Source: Octopus sinensis
Taxonomy: Eukaryota
Assembly (NCBI RefSeq): GCF_006345805.1
Contig: NC_043001.1
Coordinates: 130,944,001 to 131,008,000 of the forward strand
Direction: 5' to 3'
Length of the DNA stretch: 64,000 nucleotides
Below the pieces are notes generated by a model that did not search any database, was not told the DNA's origin, and worked only from the letters and a program-made list of their open reading frames with translations. Shown here piece by piece: positions 3,202 to 58,738 of this stretch. A program made the translations under genes and the position numbers. Numbering within the stretch: position 1 is the stretch's first letter; each line of letters begins with the position of its first letter.

Positions 3202-3244
<43 letters not shown>

Positions 3245-3410
3245 TACGACAGGCTTCTTTCAGTTTCCGTCTACCAAATCCACTCACAAGGCTTTGGTTG
3301 GCCCGAGACTATAGTAGAAGACACTTGCCCAAGTTGCCACGCAGTGGGACTGAACCCGGAACCATGTGGTTGGTAAACAAGCTACTTACCACACAGCCAC
3401 TCCTGCACCT
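2984..3410 (-). mobile_element. OK-like ~410-bp SINE with internal (TA)n/(TG)n
   Basis: Full head, internal microsatellite and tail (ttttacttgtttcagtcatttgactgcggccatgctggagcaccgcc on +). Confidence 0.9.
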
Positions 3411-10192: not shown

Positions 10193-10842
10193 TAGTTATT
10201 ATTATTATTATTGAGACGGTGCACTGGTAGAATTGTTAGCATGTGAGGCAAAATGCTTCGCAGCATTTCATCCAACTTCACTTTCTTAGTTCAAAATCTG
10301 ATGAGGTCAACTTTGCCTTTCATCATTTTGGGGTTGATAAAATTAGTACCACTTGAACACTAAGCTGAATGCAATCAACTTACTCTTCCCATGTAACTGC
10401 TGGCCTTGTGCTAAAATTTGAAACCATTATTATTATTATTATTATTCCAGCAACACTGGTGAATTTCCTTTCTTCAGGTTGGCATATTGTGTTATGTGAC
10501 AAAACATGTTACTCAATCCATTCTTTGATATTTATATTTTTGTATTAACTCAATGGATTATAGAATCACAGGAGCATATCCAGTGATACGATCACTCACA
10601 CTGTAAGACAGTATTTGTTAGCCGATACCTGTAGGTGAGATGTGTAAAGCAAACAAGGTTTATACCCAAATATAATTTGCACACATGCACACACATACCT
10701 ATTATTTACTTTCAGGTGTTTTTAACATCAGACATATTGAGAATATTCCCTTACGCCTAAAACACAGCCGACCCATGAACTAACAACACATACACCTTGT
10801 GTAAGTGTGTTCAATTATATATATATATATATATATATATTT

Positions 10843-11072
10843 AGGGTTCAGCAAAAAATTTTACTTTACCACACGCAAGAAGAGTCTCTTCTTATAGTAG
10901 AGGAAATAGCTATATTCTGTAGCTGTTATTTCTAAAAGTTCGGTGTGTGGTAAAGTAAATTATATAAAGTAATGTTTTAAATATACCGTAAATGGTCTTT
11001 TTACATACTGAACACTACTTGGTAAAATTATTAATTACTAATTAATTAATTTTACCCTTATTATTATTGACA
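10843..11072. mobile_element. Unclassified TA-flanked repeat (family shared with 39000-39220 and 48078-48270)
   Basis: Shared aaatggtc...catactgaa...cttggtgaaatt...aattaattttaccct segment. Internal inverted repeat tttactttaccacac / gtgtggtaaagtaaa. Confidence 0.7.
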
Positions 11073-13494: not shown

Positions 13495-13906
13495 CTCTTT
13501 TACTCTTTTACTTGTTTCAGTCATTTGACTGCAGCCATGCTGGAGCACCGCCTTTAATCGAGCAACTCGACCCTGGGGCATATTCTTAATAAGCCCAGTA
13601 CTTATTCTATCGGTCTCTTTTGCCGAACCGCTAAGTGATGGGGACACAAACACACCAGCATCGGTTGTCAAGCAATGCTAGGGGGACAAACACAGACACA
13701 CAAACATACACGCACACACACATATATATATATACATATATACGACGGGCGTCTTTCAGTTTCCGTCTACCAAATCCACTCACAAGGCTTTGGTCGGCCC
13801 GAGGCTATAGTAGAAGACAGTTGCCCAAGGTGCCACGCAGTGGGACTGAACCCGGAACAATGTGGTTGGTAGGCAAGCTACTTACCACACAGCCACTCCT
13901 GCGCCT
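13495..13906 (-). mobile_element. OK-like SINE, full length
   Basis: Head ends ttaccacacagccactcctgcgcct; the tail begins ctcttttactcttttacttgtttcagtc. Confidence 0.92.
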
Positions 13907-15955: not shown

Positions 15956-17220
15956 CATCTTCATTTAACATCTGTTGTCCATGCTGGCACAGGTTAGATG
16001 GTTTGACCAGGGCTGGCAAGCTGGAAGGCTGCACCAGACTCCAGTCTGATTTGGCATGGCTTCTACAGCTGGATGCCCTTCCTAATGCCAACCACTCTGG
16101 GAGTGTAATGGATGCTTTTACATGCCACTAGCATGGGTGCCATTTGCATGACATCAGTATCTGCCATGACCACGATTCTGTTTTGCTTGATGGGTCCTCT
16201 TTCTCAAGCACGACATAATGCCAAAGGTCTCAGTCATTGCCTCCAAGAAGCCCAACGCTTGAAAGGAACTCAACCATTTTGCTTCTGTGAGGCCAAATGC
16301 TTGAAAAGATTTCGCCTCTGTCAGGCTCAACGCTCGAAAGGAACTCACCTCCCTGAGGCCCAATGCTTGAAAGAAACTCACCTCCATGAGGCCCAATGCT
16401 TGAAAGAAACTCACCTCCATGAGGCCCAATGCTTGAAAGAAACTCACCTCCCTGAGGCCCAATGCTTGAAAGAAACTCACCTCCATGAGGCCCAATGCTT
16501 GAAAGAAACTCACCTCCATGAGGCCCAATGCTTGAAAGAAACTCACCTCCCTGAGGCCCAATGCTTGAAAGAAACTCACCTCCATGAGGCCCAATGCTTG
16601 AAAGAAACTCACCTCCCTGAGGCCCAATGCTTGAAAGAAACTCACCTCCATGAGGCCCAATGCTTGAAAGAAACTCACCTCCATGAGGCCCAATGCTTGA
16701 AAGAAACTCACCTCCATGAGGCCCAATGCTTGAAAGAAACTCACCTCCATGAGGCCCAATGCTTGAAGAAACTCACCTCCATGAGGCCCAATGCTTGAAA
16801 GAAACTCACCTCCATGAGGCCCAATGCTCGAAAGGAACTCACCTCCATGAGGCCCAATGCTTGAAAGAAACTCACCTCCATGAGGCCCAATGCTTGAAAG
16901 AAACTCACCTCCATGAGGCCCAATGCTTGAAAGAAACTCACCTCCATGAGGCCCAATGCTTGAAAGAAACTCACCTCCATGAGGCCCAATGCTTGAAAGG
17001 TGCTCTTTATGCACCACCAGCTCAGGTGGCAGTTACATGACATCAGCATCAGTCATGACTATGATTTCACTTGGCTTGGCGGGTCTTCTCAAGCAAAGCA
17101 TATCACCAACCGTCTCAGTTGTTAGTCATTGCTTGTGTGGGGCTCATAGTTTGAAGATCATACTTCACCACATGTCGTCCCATGTCTTCCTGGATCGACC
17201 TTTACCACAGGTGCCCTCTA
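15955..17220 (-). mobile_element. Extended family-E element hosting a 33-bp minisatellite
   Basis: Begins catcttcatttaacatctgttgtccatgctggc...ctacagctggatgcccttcctaatgcc. atgacatcag...atgac...cgat/tgat motifs occur on both sides of the array (about 16150 and 17038). Confidence 0.6.
16352..17000. repeat. 33-bp minisatellite, about 20 units
   Basis: Unit gaggcccaatgcttgaaagaaactcacctccat, with ccct variants, one 32-bp unit near 16765, and degenerate copies at 16247-16350. Confidence 0.97.
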
Positions 17221-17258: not shown

Positions 17259-17312
<54 letters not shown>

Positions 17313-17484
17313 TATATCTCTAAGGAACTATTTTTGTAATGCGCATGTAAAATTTTGGAGGGAAAATTTACGAATTCAATCGTCTATATAGGTTTGACCT
17401 ATGCTCGCTTTCTTCCACTATTTCGATGTTGCCTGGTCGGGAAGTGGAGGTACGTAGCATTTGATAAATCTATTTTAGTGGAGG

Positions 17485-17551
17485 TTTACGCTGATGAAAG
17501 ACATGAAATATATATTTTATTATATTTCTAATCTAGAAACACAGTCGTAAA
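17485..17551 (+). ncRNA. Type I hammerhead-ribozyme-like motif (probably decayed)
   Basis: tttacg CTGATGA a aga cat gaaatata [tattttat] tatatttc taa tct a GAAAC aca GT cgtaaa. Stem I tttacg/cgtaaa pairs perfectly over 6 bp, but one nucleotide appears to be missing at the cleavage site. Confidence 0.55.
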
Positions 17552-17734
17552 TGACCGTTAGACTTTGTTTTCATTATTTATTCCTTCTGTTTTGCATATG
17601 TGAATTACAGGGATATGTCGTATGTGGAGTCTTATTTGTAGAAAATAGAAATAAACAGTCTTTGACTGCTCTTTCTAAGTTTTTCGGTATGTGGCTAAGC
17701 AACCTGTTGCCTGCCTCTTTTATTTATATACAAC

Positions 17735-26071: not shown

Positions 26072-26236
26072 AGGAGTGGCTGTGTGGTAAGTAGCTTGTT
26101 TACCAACCACATGGTTCCGGGTTCAGTCCCACTGTGTGGCACCTTGAGCAAGTGTCTTCTAATATAGCCTCGGGTCGACCAAAGCCTTGTGAGTGGATTT
26201 GGTAGATGGAAACTGAAAGAAGCCCGTCGTATATAT

Positions 26237-32414: not shown

Positions 32415-32463
32415 ATATATCTGATGAGTCTTGGAAACAAACAAGATGAAAGTGTTAATAAAT
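32415..32463 (+). ncRNA. Minimal type I hammerhead-ribozyme-like motif
   Basis: atatat CTGATGA gtcttg [gaaacaaa] caagat GAAA gtgtt a ataaat. Stem II is 6 bp (G.U at 10.1-11.1, consistent with CpG decay), stem I pairs 5/6, stem III is weak, and aataaa follows. Confidence 0.55.
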
Positions 32464-32547
32464 AAATATCCCAAAATTCTGAGTATGTCTTTTCCTTAAT
32501 ATGTAAAAACTGTACACAACTACAAACAATCTATGCACACACACACA

Positions 32548-37399: not shown

Positions 37400-37790
37400 A
37401 TCCATGACCCTCACCACTATCCATACCGCCCTTGCCAGAGCACGTTCTGTGGACTGTGCATCTGCTCTCTTCCCCCCACACCCACCCCACCGTCAACCAT
37501 CTCTGTTCCCCTCGCCTACCACCCCACCACCCTACCTCTCCAACGCACCATTCTCCAAGCATTCCAGCGACTCCAGTCTGACCCATTCACTTGGCATATC
37601 TTCCCTAACCAACCCCTCCACTCCTTCAAACGAGCCCACAACCTACGGGACTTCTTGATCCACAGCTTCTTTCCTAATCCAACCTCCAAACCTGGCTCAT
37701 TCCCCTGCTCCTGCCCATGCTGCAGCACTTGCCCTTACCTCTCCAACAACATCCTTCTCACAGGCACCCATCATCGACCCCATCATATCA
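37400..37790 (+). mobile_element. Penelope-like element relic (region between RT and GIY-YIG)
   Basis: LAYHPTTLPLQRTILQAFQRLQSDPFTWHIFPNQPLHSFKRAHNLRDFLIHS...PGSFPCSCPCCSTCPY matches the PLE LVLTYHP...NLRD.LV...FPC..RC.TCP pattern. Confidence 0.85.
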
Positions 37791-38541
37791 CACCACCCCG
37801 CTCACACTGACCACTTCCCAGTACCCACACCAGCACACACACTAGCACTGACTACTTCTCAGCACCTACACCATCATCCACACACCTGCACATGCACACA
37901 CACACATCAAGGTCACCATCCCCCTTCCTAATGCACATACACACTCTCACATACACACGCACAAGAACCTTCACTTTGGGATCACCACTACTTTATTATC
38001 TCCCCTCCTTCCTAGCTCTCCTGTGTGACACGTCTGTCCAGCATTTGCCATGATAGATCACTAGCCACTAAACCTTTTTCTATTTTCTATCTCTGTTTAT
38101 TTCTGTGTTCCTTTCTGTCAAAGAGTGTAGGCTCAAAACATGCAAAGGTAATGGCTGATTTTTTAGAAAATAGTTTTAGATAGCATTTTTTAAAATTGTA
38201 CCTCTTACAATGTTTTGAAAATGTCACAAGGAGTAACTTATACATTTTTCTTTCAAATTCTGATTGTATTGGCCATATATATATATATATATATATATAG
38301 GAACATGTGCCCAAAGCCCAACGATTTCTTGGAGACACAAGGTGTGTCTTAAAACCTGCCTAAATATCTTCAATGTATGAAACTATTAGCTGCTCATAAC
38401 TGTGTACATTAAACTATATATATATATATATAAAGTATAAGAGCAATATTGGATAATAAAGCCAATTATATTTATGATATACTTACAGAAAATAGATTTA
38501 AATAATTTACAATATACCTTTTGCACAACAAATATTTAAAC

Positions 38542-38834: not shown

Positions 38835-38877
<43 letters not shown>

Positions 38878-38886
38878 AAGGAGTTC

Positions 38887-38938
38887 TGAGCTGATGATAG
38901 AAATGTCGAGTTGACTAATCTTGAAACGTACGTTCTCA
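38887..38938 (+). ncRNA. Type I hammerhead-ribozyme-like motif with palindromic stem III
   Basis: tgag CTGATGA t aga aat gtc [gagtt] gac taa tct t GAA ACGTACGT T ctca. Core intact, stem III ACGUACGU is self-complementary, cleavage triplet GUU, stem I tgag/ctca. Confidence 0.65.
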
Positions 38939-39436
38939 AATACCTTTGCATTTGATTTTTTAATGTCTTTACCCCCATACTTTCGTGAGTTGAATTGAGC
39001 AACACTATATGAGAGAGGTTTCTTTAAGTATTAGAAATAGTTTTAAAAAAGTTTTTTTAGCTACTATTTCTAATGAGTTCAGTATGCGGCAAAGTAATTT
39101 ATTTTACTAAGCCCTTTATATAATGTAATAATTTGAATTCGCCTTAAATGGTCCCTTTGCATACTGAATACTTGGTGAAATTGATTAATAATTAATTAAT
39201 TTTACCCTCAATTGTTGAAATCATATTATATTATTATATATTATATATTATATATATATATATATGTATAATATATATATATATATATTCTCCTTACAAG
39301 AATACATCTAAAACATATCTATAATAGATGCAGACACACACACCAGCAAAAAAGACAAAACAAAAATTTTATCTCAACTGATGACAACAATGAGAACTAC
39401 CACAGCCATCATCATCCTCATTATTACTATTATTAC

Positions 39437-46020: not shown

Positions 46021-46481
46021 CTTTACCCTTTTACTCTTTTACTTGTTTCAGTCATTTGACTGTGGCCATGCTGGAGCACCGCCTTTAGTCGAGCAAATTG
46101 ACCCCGGGACTTATTCTTTGTAAGCCCAGTACTTATTCTATCGGTCTCTTTTGTCGAACCGCTAAGTGACGGGAACGTAAACACACCAGCATCGGTTGTC
46201 AAGCAATGCTAGGGGGACAAACACAGACACACAAACATATACACACACACTTATATATATATATATATATATACATATATACGACAGGCTTCTGTCAGTT
46301 TCCTTCTACCAAATCCACTCACAAGGCATTGGTCGGCTCGGGGCTATAGCAGAAGACACTTGCCCAAGGTTCCACGCAGTGGGACTGAACCCGGAACCAT
46401 GTGGTTGGTTAGCAAGCTACTTACCACACAGCCACTCCAACGCCTATGCAAGCTACTTACCACACAGCCACTCCTGCACCT
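46021..46481 (-). mobile_element. OK-like SINE with duplicated 36-bp 5' head
   Basis: gcaagctacttaccacacagccactcc at 46412 and 46448. Confidence 0.9.
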
Positions 46482-48077: not shown

Positions 48078-48266
48078 CAATAATTGAGGGTAAAATTAAT
48101 TAGTTATTAATCAATTTCACCAAGTAGTGTTCAGTTTGTTAAAGGACCATTTAAGGCGTATTCAAAATATTACATTATATAATTAGGGCTTAGTAAAATA
48201 AATTACTTTGCCACATACTGAACTTTCTAGAAATAGCAGCCAAAAAGTTTTTTAGCCATTTCCACT

Positions 48267-48318
<52 letters not shown>

Positions 48319-48890
48319 ATGGGCTTCTTTCAGTTTCCATCTCTCAAATCCACTCATAACACTTGGGTAGGCCTGAGGCTACAATAGAAGACACTTGCCC
48401 AAGGTGCCATGCAGTGGAACTGAACTCAGAAGCATGTAGTTGGGAATCAAGCTTCTTACCATACATACATGAACGCACTTATTTATTGCCTGATTTAAAA
48501 GTAAACAATGTCACAAATATTTATTAGGATGACCAGCAAGAACTGTGCATGTAATACCAGTTATTATCAGAGGATAGGGCTTTATCCAAAATGAGAAAAA
48601 AAAATCTGTCATGCTATCTCGTACAGCTGGATAGCAAGACATGCATGTGCTCCAAAAATGTACCTCCATTGGAACATCTTATATTCTTGGAAGTGTACTT
48701 TCTGTCTTCAAACCTTTTGTTAAAGATTGACAAACGATGATGCAATAACAAAAAAAATAAGTATTCATACTGATACTGTGCAATGAAATTTAGTAGCAGT
48801 AGTAGTAGTAGTAGTTTCTTTTATTAGCCACAAGGTAACAGACGAAGGGAACATCACAAAGACAGTTCACAATTTACATGGGGGTTTACA

Positions 48891-57328: not shown

Positions 57329-58738
57329 AGTTAGTTAGTTAGTTAGTTAATTTGGCTCAAAAGCAAATAGCAAGGCCATGTAGGGGGACATGGAGTTAAG
57401 TACAGGGTGGTGTTCATGTAAAGAGTTCAGGCCACTTGAGGTCCAGGGAGGCTTTGAACAAAGCGGTCATCGGCATCTTCACCATCTTGTCTGGCAGCTT
57501 GTTCCACGGATCCGCAACCCAGACGGAGAAAGCTCCTCTCCTTCGATTGAGATGAAATCGTTGCAGGTAGAGCTTTTCGGAATGACCCCGCAGCCGACGC
57601 TCTGGAGCAGGAGTGAAGAACAGCTCTTTCAAGAGGTTACACTTTCCGCTTATGATGTTGTGGGCAAGAATGAGATCACCACGTCGGCGGCGTTTTTCCA
57701 GAGAATAAAGGTCGAGCGTCCTCAGCCTTTCTTCGTAGGACAAATTTTTGAGACCATGAACCATGCGGGTAGCCAGCCTCTGGACTCTTTCAAGATGCTG
57801 TATGTCTTTGAGGAGATAAGGAGAAGAGGCTTGAATCCCATACTCCAATATGGGTCTCACCAGCGTGACATAGAGTGGTAGGAATATGGCTGCTGTGAGC
57901 ATTCCGAATGACCGTCAAATCAAGAACAGAATTCCGCGTGCTTTGTTGGCAGCATGGACGCACTGGGCCGAAGGCGAAAAGGAGGAATCCACCAAGATAC
58001 CCAGGTCCTTTACCTGATCGGTCCTCTCCAGCAGCAGACGACCCGGCTCGAAATCAAGTTGAGTTGCAGGAGTAGAGCCGACAGGCAGATGACAGCACTT
58101 TGACACGTTCAGACACAGGTCCCAATCATTAGACCACTTCCAAATTTGGTGGAGGCATCGACGAAGATCCTCTATATTACCGCGAGGAGCGACCAGTTTG
58201 ATATCGTCAGCAATAGAAGGGTGTGTTGCGTGAGGTCGTCGGGCAAGTCATTATGAAGACTAAGAACAACATGGGCCCAAGCACTGAACCTTGAGGCACG
58301 CCACTGCTCGCACTGGAGACGTCGGACCGCGAACCATTAACTTGGACTTGGAAGGAGCGATCTGAGAGGAAGGCACCACCCATCGTATAATATCCGGATG
58401 GAAACTATATGCTTGAAGCTTGACAAGTAATAGGCGGTGGTTTACCGAGTCAAAAGCTTTGCAAAGTCCAATAAAACGATGTCAACAGCATCACTATCAT
58501 CGAGGATGCGCGTCACCAATTCTTCCATTACTAGTAAGTTGGTCAAGCATGATCTCTTCGGCACGAAGCCGTGTTGGGAATCAGAGATAGAGGCTGTGTT
58601 TAGGAGGTGGAGCATCATACTTTTCTTAAGGATGGTTTCGAACATCTTGCTGATTATTGATGTAAGGGAAACCGGTCGGTAGTTAAGCGGGTCTTCGCTG
58701 CTCTCTTTCTTGAGAATTGGGCAGATTATCGCTGTTAC
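57329..58738 (-). mobile_element. CR1 LINE, 5'-truncated, RT plus C-terminus (frameshifted)
   Basis: QHGFVPKRSCLTNLL, DIVLLDFAK, and ORF 57414-57902 LYVTLVRPILEYG...LERVQRLATRMV...SLEKRRRRGDLI...WNKLP. (TAAC)n tail. Confidence 0.95.

What the first reader, a model, noticed from the sequence alone, without database searches (positions are those of the whole stretch)
17485..17551. Hammerhead-like motif sharing stem II architecture with the 38.9-kb motif
Both read CUGAUGA-N-AGA-NAU-[stem]-loop-[stem]-UAA-UCU-N-GAAAC, with an unpaired 10.1-11.1 position (A.A versus U.U), a 3-bp AGA/UCU stem and a 3x3 internal loop. The inner stems differ completely (gaaatata/tatatttc versus gtc/gac) yet both pair, as does stem I (tttacg/cgtaaa versus tgag/ctca). 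Flanks are not obviously homologous. Structure conserved with compensatory sequence change points to an ancestral functional RNA, possibly an atypical hammerhead subtype in cephalopod PLE or retrozyme-like elements.
Basis: partly seen in the sequence, partly recalled or inferred. Interest (0 to 1): 0.75.

Follow-up and report, generated by a model that had tools for sequence, protein, structure and literature searches.

The report
Hammerhead ribozyme relics in a retroelement
The two look-alike motifs are real and are copies of one old mobile-element family that carries a hammerhead-type self-cutting RNA; this class is already known to be very common in animal genomes, so the find is a modest new example, not a new kind of RNA.

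Summary
Both sites read CTGATGA-N-AGA-NAT-[hairpin]-TAA-TCT-N-GAAAC, with a stem I on either side.

The two sites are not independent. They lie in collinear, homologous copies of one dispersed repeat ("family X"): copy D at 17311-17724 and copy C at 38876-39217. Two further copies at 48078-48272(-) and 10841-11069(+) are cut short at the 5' end and lack the motif. All four abut (TA)n on both sides. That pattern suggests a retroelement that inserts into microsatellites.

- **The 38.9-kb motif** fits a type-I, dimer-acting hammerhead. It has the full core, an A15.1-U16.1 pair, a GUU cleavage triplet and a perfectly palindromic helix III (ACGUACGU). The one departure is U.U in place of G10.1-C11.1.
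- **The 17.5-kb motif** (the finding) has lost helix III and is probably inactive.
- **Covariation:** four base pairs differ on both sides between the two copies.
- **Nearby element:** a fragment of a Penelope-like element (PLE) ORF lies 1.08 kb upstream of the 38.9-kb motif on the same strand. Collinearity with the motif is not shown.
- **Precedent:** an active axolotl retrozyme hammerhead also has a U.U mismatch at the base of helix II.

Verdict: relic hammerheads of a PLE-related or retrozyme-like element, a new variant of a known kind. No third motif-bearing copy was available and cleavage is untested. The host organism was not identified.

The parts
17485..17551 (+). m17, the hammerhead-like motif of the finding. 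Helix I is 17485-90 with 17546-51. The CUGAUGA box is 17491-97. A.A sits at 17498/17535. Proximal helix II is AGA 17499-501 with UCU 17532-34. There is a 3x3 internal loop, a distal hairpin at 17505-28 and GAAAC at 17536-40. Helix III is absent.
   Evidence: Sequence read. The minimum-energy (MFE) fold has z = -4.3 but pairs the core CUG with CAG. The motif fails the hammerhead descriptor.
38887..38938 (+). m38, a near-intact type-I hammerhead motif. Helix I is 38887-90 with 38935-38. The CUGAUGA box is 38891-97. U.U sits at 38898/38922. Helix II is AGA/UCU, then a 3x3 loop, then gtc/gac. GAAA is 38923-26. Helix III is A38926-U38933 and C38927-G38932 with a GUAC loop. N17 is U38934, so the predicted cut lies between 38934 and 38935.
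   Evidence: the only hit to the tight descriptor; 5 of 300 shuffles give a hit. One search shows the ACGUACGU palindrome and a double-hammerhead energy of -18.8 kcal/mol.
17311..17724 (+). Copy D of dispersed repeat 'family X', bounded by (TA)n on both sides. It carries m17 and reaches 174 nt upstream of it.
   Evidence: downstream flank homologous to copy C, z = 5.7; 17653-17702 matches 48252-48203.
38876..39217 (+). Copy C of family X, bounded by (TA)n on both sides. m38 lies 11 nt from its 5' edge. Its 3' end, TTTTACCCTCAATTGTTGA, is shared with copies A and B.
48078..48272 (-). Copy A of family X. It is 5'-truncated and has no hammerhead part. It is 86% identical to 39026-39217.
10841..11069 (+). 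Copy B of family X. It is 5'-truncated and has no hammerhead part.
37418..37807 (+). Degenerate ORF fragment of an endonuclease-bearing (EN+) Penelope-like element. It covers the linker between the reverse transcriptase (RT) and the GIY-YIG nuclease, including the Cys-rich CX..CxxC motif. It lies 1.08 kb upstream of m38 on the same strand. That it belongs to the same element as m38 is not shown.
   Evidence: phmmer gave 524 hits at E<=1e-3, best 3.8e-15. The long hits carry RVT_1 plus GIY-YIG. tblastn finds it as the only PLE fragment in the window.

Best explanation
Both motifs are copies by descent of a type-I hammerhead ribozyme carried in the 3'-proximal part of an old, non-coding retroelement family (family X). 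That family is either the terminal (pLTR-like) part of a Penelope-like element or a non-autonomous element that depends on one (retrozyme-like).

Inferred mechanism while the family was active: the element was transcribed, and two hammerhead copies paired through the palindromic helix III (ACGUACGU) to form a double hammerhead. This cut after N17 and trimmed the element RNA out of longer transcripts. The RNA was then reverse-transcribed into (TA)n microsatellites, often incompletely, which left 5'-truncated copies.

The shared features are family traits kept under selection in the master copies. These are a non-Watson-Crick N.N at 10.1/11.1, a 3-bp AGA/UCU helix, a conserved 3x3 internal loop and a variable distal hairpin. 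Helix I and the distal hairpin drifted with compensatory changes.

In this window the copies are relics. m38 still has every element a dimeric hammerhead needs. m17 has lost helix III and is probably dead.

Shown: the sequence architecture, the homology of the copies, the (TA)n boundaries, the 5' truncation, the compensatory pairs and the nearby PLE fragment. Inferred: self-cleavage, action as a dimer, and mobilisation by PLE machinery.
For: - The core boxes and all three helices are in canonical order in m38. It is the only hit to the tight descriptor, and 5 of 300 shuffles give any hit.
- The 8-nt perfect palindrome ACGUACGU at helix III/loop 3 is the hallmark of dimer-acting metazoan type-I hammerheads (PMC4209133; PMC7229834).
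- Four pairs are changed on both sides between the copies, against 0-1 in slid controls.
- The core plus proximal helix II is 26/29 identical in the structural alignment, while the rest of the aligned element is about 54% identical.
- The two sites are collinear homologues. There are four family copies with a shared 3' end, different 5' ends and (TA)n on both sides. An insertion bias for (TA)n microsatellites is described for the Naiad PLEs and microsatellite bias for PLEs in general (PMC8557442).
- A PLE RT-EN linker fragment lies 1.08 kb upstream on the same strand.
- A U.U mismatch at the base of helix II occurs in an active natural hammerhead, HHR_Amex2.
- Related PLE loci carry a hammerhead 96-155 nt after the ORF stop.
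Against: - Only two motif-bearing copies exist, and they are homologous. The covariation evidence therefore rests on one pairwise comparison (shuffle control 32/500).
- G10.1-C11.1 is reported as highly conserved in PLE hammerheads. Here it is A.A or U.U.
- PLE min-hammerheads are described with a 6-8 bp uninterrupted helix II, apart from a single bulged nucleotide in D. virilis. Here helix II is broken by a 3x3 loop.
- m17 lacks helix III.
- The hammerhead fold is not the minimum-energy fold of m38 (-7.4 constrained against -11.4 free; z = +0.6).
- No Rfam hammerhead model matches at E<=10. However, the same search also misses a canonical PLE hammerhead.
- There is no second copy nearby for dimer formation, and no tandem arrangement.
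- No GIY-YIG remnant lies between the PLE fragment and m38. Six loci with paralogous PLE fragments lack the motif.
Confidence: 0.65

Rival explanations
1. Chance resemblance. Family X is an ordinary SINE- or MITE-like repeat whose ancestral sequence happened to contain CTGATGA...GAAAC with pairable flanks. The two sites share it only because they are copies, and no ribozyme ever existed.
For: The two sites are homologous, so the motif arose once. The tight descriptor still hits in about 1.7% of shuffled windows, and a scan of many windows will meet such cases. 10.1/11.1 is unpaired and helix II is interrupted. m17 is not a valid hammerhead. The free minimum-energy fold of m38 is not the hammerhead fold.
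Against: - Four compensatory pairs fall exactly in helices I and II, while the core stays 26/29 identical against about 54% elsewhere.
- The 8-nt palindrome sits exactly at helix III.
- The element behaves like a retroelement that targets (TA)n, the class known to carry hammerheads.
- A PLE fragment lies next to it.
Confidence: 0.22
2. A host-domesticated, currently functional self-cleaving RNA (for example one processing a host transcript), not a transposon relic.
For: The core and proximal helix II are much better conserved than the flanks.
Against: m17 has lost helix III. Both sites sit in repeat copies bounded by microsatellites, with truncated sister copies. There is no evidence of a host gene context. 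No orthologous comparison was possible.
Confidence: 0.06
3. A box C/D snoRNA-like or other k-turn small RNA. UGAUGA would be box C, with a terminal stem.
For: There are faint Rfam hits: SNORD127 at 19.5 bits over 17483-17553 and snoU54 at 14.2 bits over 38886-38942.
Against: Both scores are far below the gathering scores (45 and 35). Neither copy has a box D (CUGA) next to the 3' strand of the terminal stem; they read acagt and gtacgtt instead. The motif sits inside a dispersed repeat.
Confidence: 0.03

Closest known systems
Type-I hammerheads of metazoan non-LTR retrozymes, especially axolotl HHR_Amex2 (Cervera & de la Pena 2020, PMC7229834)
   Same: Both have the CUGAUGA / GAAA core, an open helix I, a 2-bp helix III capped by a tetraloop, and action as dimers. 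Both have a U.U mismatch at the base of helix II, as in m38, and an AT-rich non-coding carrier element. HHR_Amex2 cleaves: 22% per hour as a monomer and much better as a dimer.
   Different: Retrozymes are described as head-to-tail tandem repeats of about 170-400 bp. Here the copies are single and dispersed, bounded by (TA)n and 5'-truncated. Helix II here continues through a conserved 3x3 internal loop into a variable hairpin instead of ending in a short loop 2. m17 has A.A in place of U.U.
Minimal hammerheads (min-HHR) in the pLTRs of Penelope-like elements (Cervera & de la Pena 2014, PMC4209133). A local example is CUGACGA-a-GGGCuaacGCUC-GAAAC-GUC in L009, L012 and L014.
   Same: Both have a short helix I (4-6 bp), an extra nucleotide right after A9, and palindromic 15.2-16.2/loop 3 implying a dimer. 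Low or no activity is expected from a monomer. Both are widely scattered as single copies from truncated elements. A PLE ORF fragment lies 1.08 kb upstream here.
   Different: - PLE min-HHRs keep G10.1-C11.1 and a 6-8 bp helix II without an internal loop (a single bulged nucleotide in D. virilis). Here 10.1/11.1 is A.A or U.U, and helix II is 3 bp, then a 3x3 loop, then a hairpin.
- In related PLEs the hammerhead lies 96-155 nt after the ORF stop. Here it lies 1.08 kb after a linker fragment, with no GIY-YIG region in between.
Rfam hammerhead families (Hammerhead_1 RF00163, Hammerhead_3 RF00008, HH9, HH10, Hammerhead_II)
   Same: Core sequence boxes and three-helix junction.
   Different: There is no match at E<=10 for either motif. 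The same search also misses the canonical PLE min-HHR of L009, so these models do not cover the dimer-type minimal forms.

Membership tests
Hammerhead ribozyme | Core boxes C3-U4-G5-A6-N7-G8-A9 and G12-A13-A14 on either side of helix II | tested here: met
   CTGATGA at 17491-97 and 38891-97; GAAA at 17536-39 and 38923-26.
Hammerhead ribozyme | A15.1-U16.1 pair, helix III, and a non-G nucleotide 17 directly before the 3' strand of helix I (tested on m38) | tested here: met
   A38926-U38933, C38927-G38932, U38934, then CUCA pairing with UGAG. m38 is the only hit to the tight descriptor.
Hammerhead ribozyme | A15.1-U16.1 pair, helix III, and nucleotide 17 in register with helix I (tested on m17, the finding itself) | tested here: not met
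   With helix I in register, position 16.1 is G17544. Using the GUC triplet instead puts helix I one nucleotide out of register. m17 is not found by the descriptor (helix 4 is 50% paired).
Hammerhead ribozyme | G10.1-C11.1 pair closing helix II | tested here: not met
   A.A in m17 and U.U in m38. A U.U at the base of helix II is reported in the active HHR_Amex2, so this feature is usual but not absolute.
Hammerhead ribozyme | Score above the gathering threshold of an Rfam hammerhead covariance model | tested here: inconclusive
   No hammerhead hit at gathering score or at E<=10. The positive control, a canonical PLE min-HHR in L009, is also missed.
Hammerhead ribozyme | Site-specific self-cleavage giving 2',3'-cyclic phosphate and 5'-OH ends | not testable with these tools
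   Needs an in vitro transcription and cleavage assay.
Dimer-acting metazoan type-I hammerhead | Short helix III with palindromic 15.2-16.2/loop 3, allowing a double hammerhead | tested here: met
   m38 reads ACGUACGU, a perfect 8-nt palindrome. The double-hammerhead structure scores -18.8 kcal/mol against -4.2 for two single hammerhead folds. m17 reads ACACAGUCG and is not palindromic.
Penelope-like element pLTR hammerhead | Motif lies in the terminal repeat flanking an RT + GIY-YIG ORF | tested here: inconclusive
   A PLE linker fragment at 37418-37807 lies on the same strand 1.08 kb upstream of m38. No GIY-YIG remnant and no collinearity were found. There is none near m17. L003-L008 carry the PLE fragment without the motif.
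Penelope-like element pLTR hammerhead | Copies inserted in microsatellites, mostly as truncated single copies | tested here: met
   Four family X copies each abut (TA)n on both sides. Three share a 3' end, and their 5' ends differ. The literature basis is PMC8557442 and PMC4209133.
Non-LTR retrozyme | Head-to-tail tandem repeats, each unit with one type-I hammerhead | tested here: not met
   The covariance model R1, run with filters off, finds only the two sites 21 kb apart. There is no adjacent unit.
Box C/D snoRNA | Box C (RUGAUGA) and box D (CUGA) brought together by a terminal stem | tested here: not met
   No CUGA lies next to the 3' strand of the stem. Rfam scores are 19.5 and 14.2 bits against gathering scores of 45 and 35.

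The most novel reading that the evidence does not exclude
Family X carries a distinct hammerhead sub-class. In it, position 10.1/11.1 is obligatorily a symmetric non-Watson-Crick pair (A.A or U.U). Loop 2 is replaced by a conserved 3x3 internal loop plus a variable hairpin. This form is catalytically competent as a dimer and is used by a (TA)n-targeting retroelement lineage of this invertebrate genome.
Probability: 0.15. Interest if true: 0.5.

Novelty: new variant of a known kind. Interest (0 to 1): 0.3.

Why it matters
Hammerheads in Penelope-like elements and retrozymes are already known in very large numbers in animal genomes, so this is not a new principle.

If the shared helix II design proves active and common in the source genome, it would do three things. 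The design is a mismatch at 10.1/11.1, a 3-bp helix, a conserved internal loop and a variable hairpin.
- It would widen the sequence descriptors used to find hammerheads. Both Rfam and the published min-HHR descriptor (which requires G10.1-C11.1) would miss it.
- It would add a case of tolerance at the 10.1/11.1 position, where a metal-binding role is recalled from general knowledge of the ribozyme.
- It would mark a retroelement family that targets (TA)n.

For annotating this window, the result explains four repeat copies and shows that the finding itself is a dead copy.

Tried and rejected
- **Rfam, whole window at gathering score, and both sites at E<=10:** no hammerhead, only far sub-threshold C/D snoRNA and microRNA hits on (TA)n. 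The snoRNA reading was rejected because there is no D box.
- **Third copy in the window:** model R1, built from the two sites and run with filters off, gave as next best hit a 19-bit match to TA/TG microsatellite.
- **Exact-pattern scans:** metagenome contigs gave 2 matches that look like chance (an apparently protein-coding stretch, possibly a group II intron maturase, not tested, and an AT-rich stretch). Viral contigs gave 0. These collections hold essentially no DNA of this organism, so they only calibrate rarity.
- **First protein search with the PLE fragment:** no hit in the word-indexed database. The exhaustive phmmer search succeeded.
- **Paralogous PLE fragments from Logan assemblies (L003-L008):** 66-75% identical over 37408-37790 only, with no hammerhead core and no R1 hit. 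They neither link nor unlink the motif from the PLE.
- **Upstream part of copy D against the stretch between the PLE fragment and m38:** no similarity (z = -0.6).
- **Exact look-up of the 58-aa ORF over m17:** not on record. A search for the SRR accession prefix of the Logan runs found only an unrelated paper. The organism stays unidentified.
- **tRNA-derived SINE head:** ARAGORN finds no tRNA in the window.
- **Lunse et al. 2017 on small PLE hammerhead variants:** not held in the library.
- **Searching junk ORFs of family X for more copies:** considered and dropped, because the open frames are only 28-63 codons long and not shared between copies.

Full report
**What is there.** The finding is accurate at the level of sequence. 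At 17485-17551 (+) the window reads tttacg-CTGATGA-a-AGA-cat-gaaatata-(tattttat)-tatatttc-TAA-TCT-a-GAAAC-acagt-cgtaaa. At 38887-38938 (+) it reads tgag-CTGATGA-t-AGA-aat-gtc-(gagtt)-gac-TAA-TCT-t-GAAAC-gtacgtt-ctca. CTGATGANAGA occurs only at these two places, against 0.17 expected. The full shared pattern of 23 fixed bases is extremely rare. It gave two matches in 241 million metagenome records, both of which look like chance matches, and none in the viral collection. The similarity between the two sites is therefore not chance.

**The two sites are copies of one repeat.**
- The downstream flanks align at identical offsets. A local alignment gives z = 5.7 with 0 of 300 shuffles as good, including the block CTGCTCTTTCTAAG..TTCGGTATGTGGCTAAGCAA against CTACTATTTCTAAT..TTCAGTATGCGGCAAAGTAA.
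- That block belongs to a repeat with two more copies in the window: 48078-48272 (-), 86% identical to 39026-39217, and 10841-11069 (+).
- I call the four copies D (17311-17724), C (38876-39217), A and B.
- Each abuts (TA)n on both sides.
- A, B and C share the 3' end TTTTACCCTCAATTRTTGA but start at different points. Only C and D reach far enough 5' to include the motif.
- Variable 5' truncation with a common 3' end, plus insertion into (TA)n, is how a retroelement behaves. Microsatellite insertion bias is described for Penelope-like elements (PLEs), with (TA)n named for the Naiad clade (PMC8557442).

**Hammerhead anatomy.** In standard numbering m38 has:
- C3-A9 (CUGAUGA) and G12-A14;
- A15.1-U16.1 and C15.2-G16.2, closed by a GUAC loop;
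- U17, then C1.1-U-C-A pairing with U-G-A-G2.1.

It is the only hit in the window to a tight descriptor that tolerates a 10.1/11.1 mismatch. Five of 300 dinucleotide shuffles of the window give any hit. Helix III plus its loop is the perfect palindrome ACGUACGU. A short palindromic helix III is the published hallmark of metazoan type-I hammerheads that work as dimers (PMC4209133; PMC7229834). A double-hammerhead pairing of two m38 RNAs scores -18.8 kcal/mol. Two single hammerhead folds score -4.2 and two free monomers -13.4, although the unconstrained dimer optimum (-26.8) is a different duplex.

m17, the motif of the finding, is different. Relative to m38 it lacks two bases after GAAAC. With helix I in register it has G at 16.1; with the GUC triplet, helix I is out of register by one. 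It fails the descriptor. Its strongly negative fold energy (z = -4.3) comes from a long hairpin that swallows the core CUG. I read m17 as a decayed copy.

**Conservation pattern.** In the structural alignment the core plus proximal helix II is 26/29 identical. The rest of the aligned element is about 54% identical.
- Four pairs are changed on both sides and still pair: two in helix I (A-U to G-C, C-G to A-U) and two in the distal helix II (A-U to U-A, A-U to C-G).
- The slid-partner controls give 0-1 such pairs. With two sequences the shuffle control is weak (32 of 500).
- Under hammerhead constraints both copies also extend helix I beyond an internal loop through a conserved GG/CC.
- Two of the three differences in the conserved block are the facing bases at 10.1 and 11.1 (A.A against U.U).
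- Either an A-U or U-A ancestor was broken independently in both copies, or a symmetric non-pair is tolerated or selected. Two sequences cannot decide.

**Link to Penelope-like elements.**
- A degenerate ORF at 37418-37807 (+) has 524 relatives at E<=1e-3 (best 3.8e-15) among 1.84 billion representative proteins.
- The long relatives carry RVT_1 plus GIY-YIG, the architecture of EN+ PLEs.
- The fragment is the RT-EN linker with the Cys-rich CX..CxxC motif described for the Neptune and Nematis clades.
- It is the only PLE fragment in the window. It lies 1.08 kb upstream of m38 on the same strand.
- By my own rough estimate, one of two motifs would fall that close downstream on the same strand by chance about 2% of the time.
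- No GIY-YIG remnant follows the fragment. The stretch in between is microsatellite and unrelated sequence.
- Copy D's upstream part does not match that stretch.
- Six loci with paralogous fragments from Logan assemblies show homology only over 37408-37790 and contain no such motif. The link is therefore suggestive, not shown.
- For comparison, PLE loci whose linker is 45% identical to the window's fragment (L009, L012, L014) carry a canonical minimal hammerhead, CUGACGA-a-GGGCuaacGCUC-GAAAC-GUC, 96-155 nt after the ORF stop.

**How unusual is the architecture?** The published consensus for PLE min-hammerheads has one extra nucleotide after A9, a conserved G10.1-C11.1 and a 6-8 bp helix II with no internal loop; D. 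virilis has a single bulged nucleotide.

The window's motif has the extra nucleotide. It also has a facing unpaired nucleotide, then 3 bp, a conserved 3x3 loop (NAU/UAA) and a variable hairpin. That is a departure, but not without precedent. The axolotl retrozyme hammerhead HHR_Amex2 (about 60,000 copies) has a U.U mismatch at the base of helix II and a 2-bp helix III with a tetraloop. It cleaves 22% in one hour as a monomer and much better as a dimer.

The lack of any Rfam hammerhead hit says little, because the same search misses the canonical PLE hammerhead of L009.

**Verdict.** These are relic copies of a hammerhead-bearing retroelement family of the PLE/retrozyme kind. m38 is near-intact and of the dimer type. 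m17 is defective.

Self-cleavage, action as a dimer and dependence on PLE machinery are all inferred. The main rival is a chance hammerhead-like string in an ordinary repeat. It is weakened by the compensatory pairs, the palindrome and the element's behaviour, but it cannot be excluded with two copies.

The organism was not identified. The AT-rich, microsatellite- and SINE-rich sequence fits an invertebrate, but 'cephalopod' is untested.

This is a new variant of a well-known kind. Interest is modest (0.3).

Noticed in passing
window 16288-16999: A tandem array of a 33-bp unit (TGAGGCCCAATGCTTGAAAGAAACTCACCTCCA), 21.6 copies, 95% matches. It lies about 300 nt upstream of repeat copy D and creates long spurious ORFs on both strands.
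   Followed up: partly
window, about 20 sites (e.g. 3244-3384, 13740-13880, 26092-26232, 46279-46419): A SINE-like dispersed repeat of about 140 nt or more, with about 20 copies in 64 kb at 75-94% identity. It gives the recurrent pseudo-peptide ...YQIHSQGFGRPEAIVEDTCPRCHAVGLNPEPCGW. One copy (48321-48453) sits next to family X copy A.
   Followed up: partly
window 32421-32504 (+): A second hammerhead-core-like string: CTGATGA-GTCTTG-gaaacaaa-CAAGAT-GAAAG. It has a 6-bp helix II (G.U at 10.1/11.1) but no convincing helix III, and its helix I is made of AT repeat. It passes only the loose descriptor and is probably chance.
   Followed up: partly
window 57417-58738 (-): Fragments of a reverse transcriptase ORF (RVT_1, E = 3e-6 and 0.008) in several shifted frames, possibly a decayed non-LTR (LINE-like) element. 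They are unrelated to the PLE fragment.
   Followed up: partly
window 39030-39074: An inverted repeat inside family X (tagaaatagt...actatttcta). It is 83% self-complementary and gives a sub-threshold CRISPR-DR50 hit in Rfam. It is also present in copies A and B.
   Followed up: no
L009 5835-5869, L012 (+96 after ORF stop), L014 (+155 after ORF stop): Canonical PLE minimal hammerheads (CUGACGA-a-GGGCuaacGCUC-GAAAC-GUC) downstream of RT/GIY-YIG ORFs in ENA assemblies. The one tested (L009) is not detected by any Rfam hammerhead model at E<=10 in a 601-nt search, which points to a gap in Rfam coverage of dimer-type minimal hammerheads.
   Followed up: partly
L003-L008 against window 37408-37790: Independent paralogous copies of the PLE linker fragment in Logan assemblies share homology with the window over the same ~380-nt stretch only. 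This may mean that this piece of the PLE ORF was amplified or preserved on its own.
   Followed up: no
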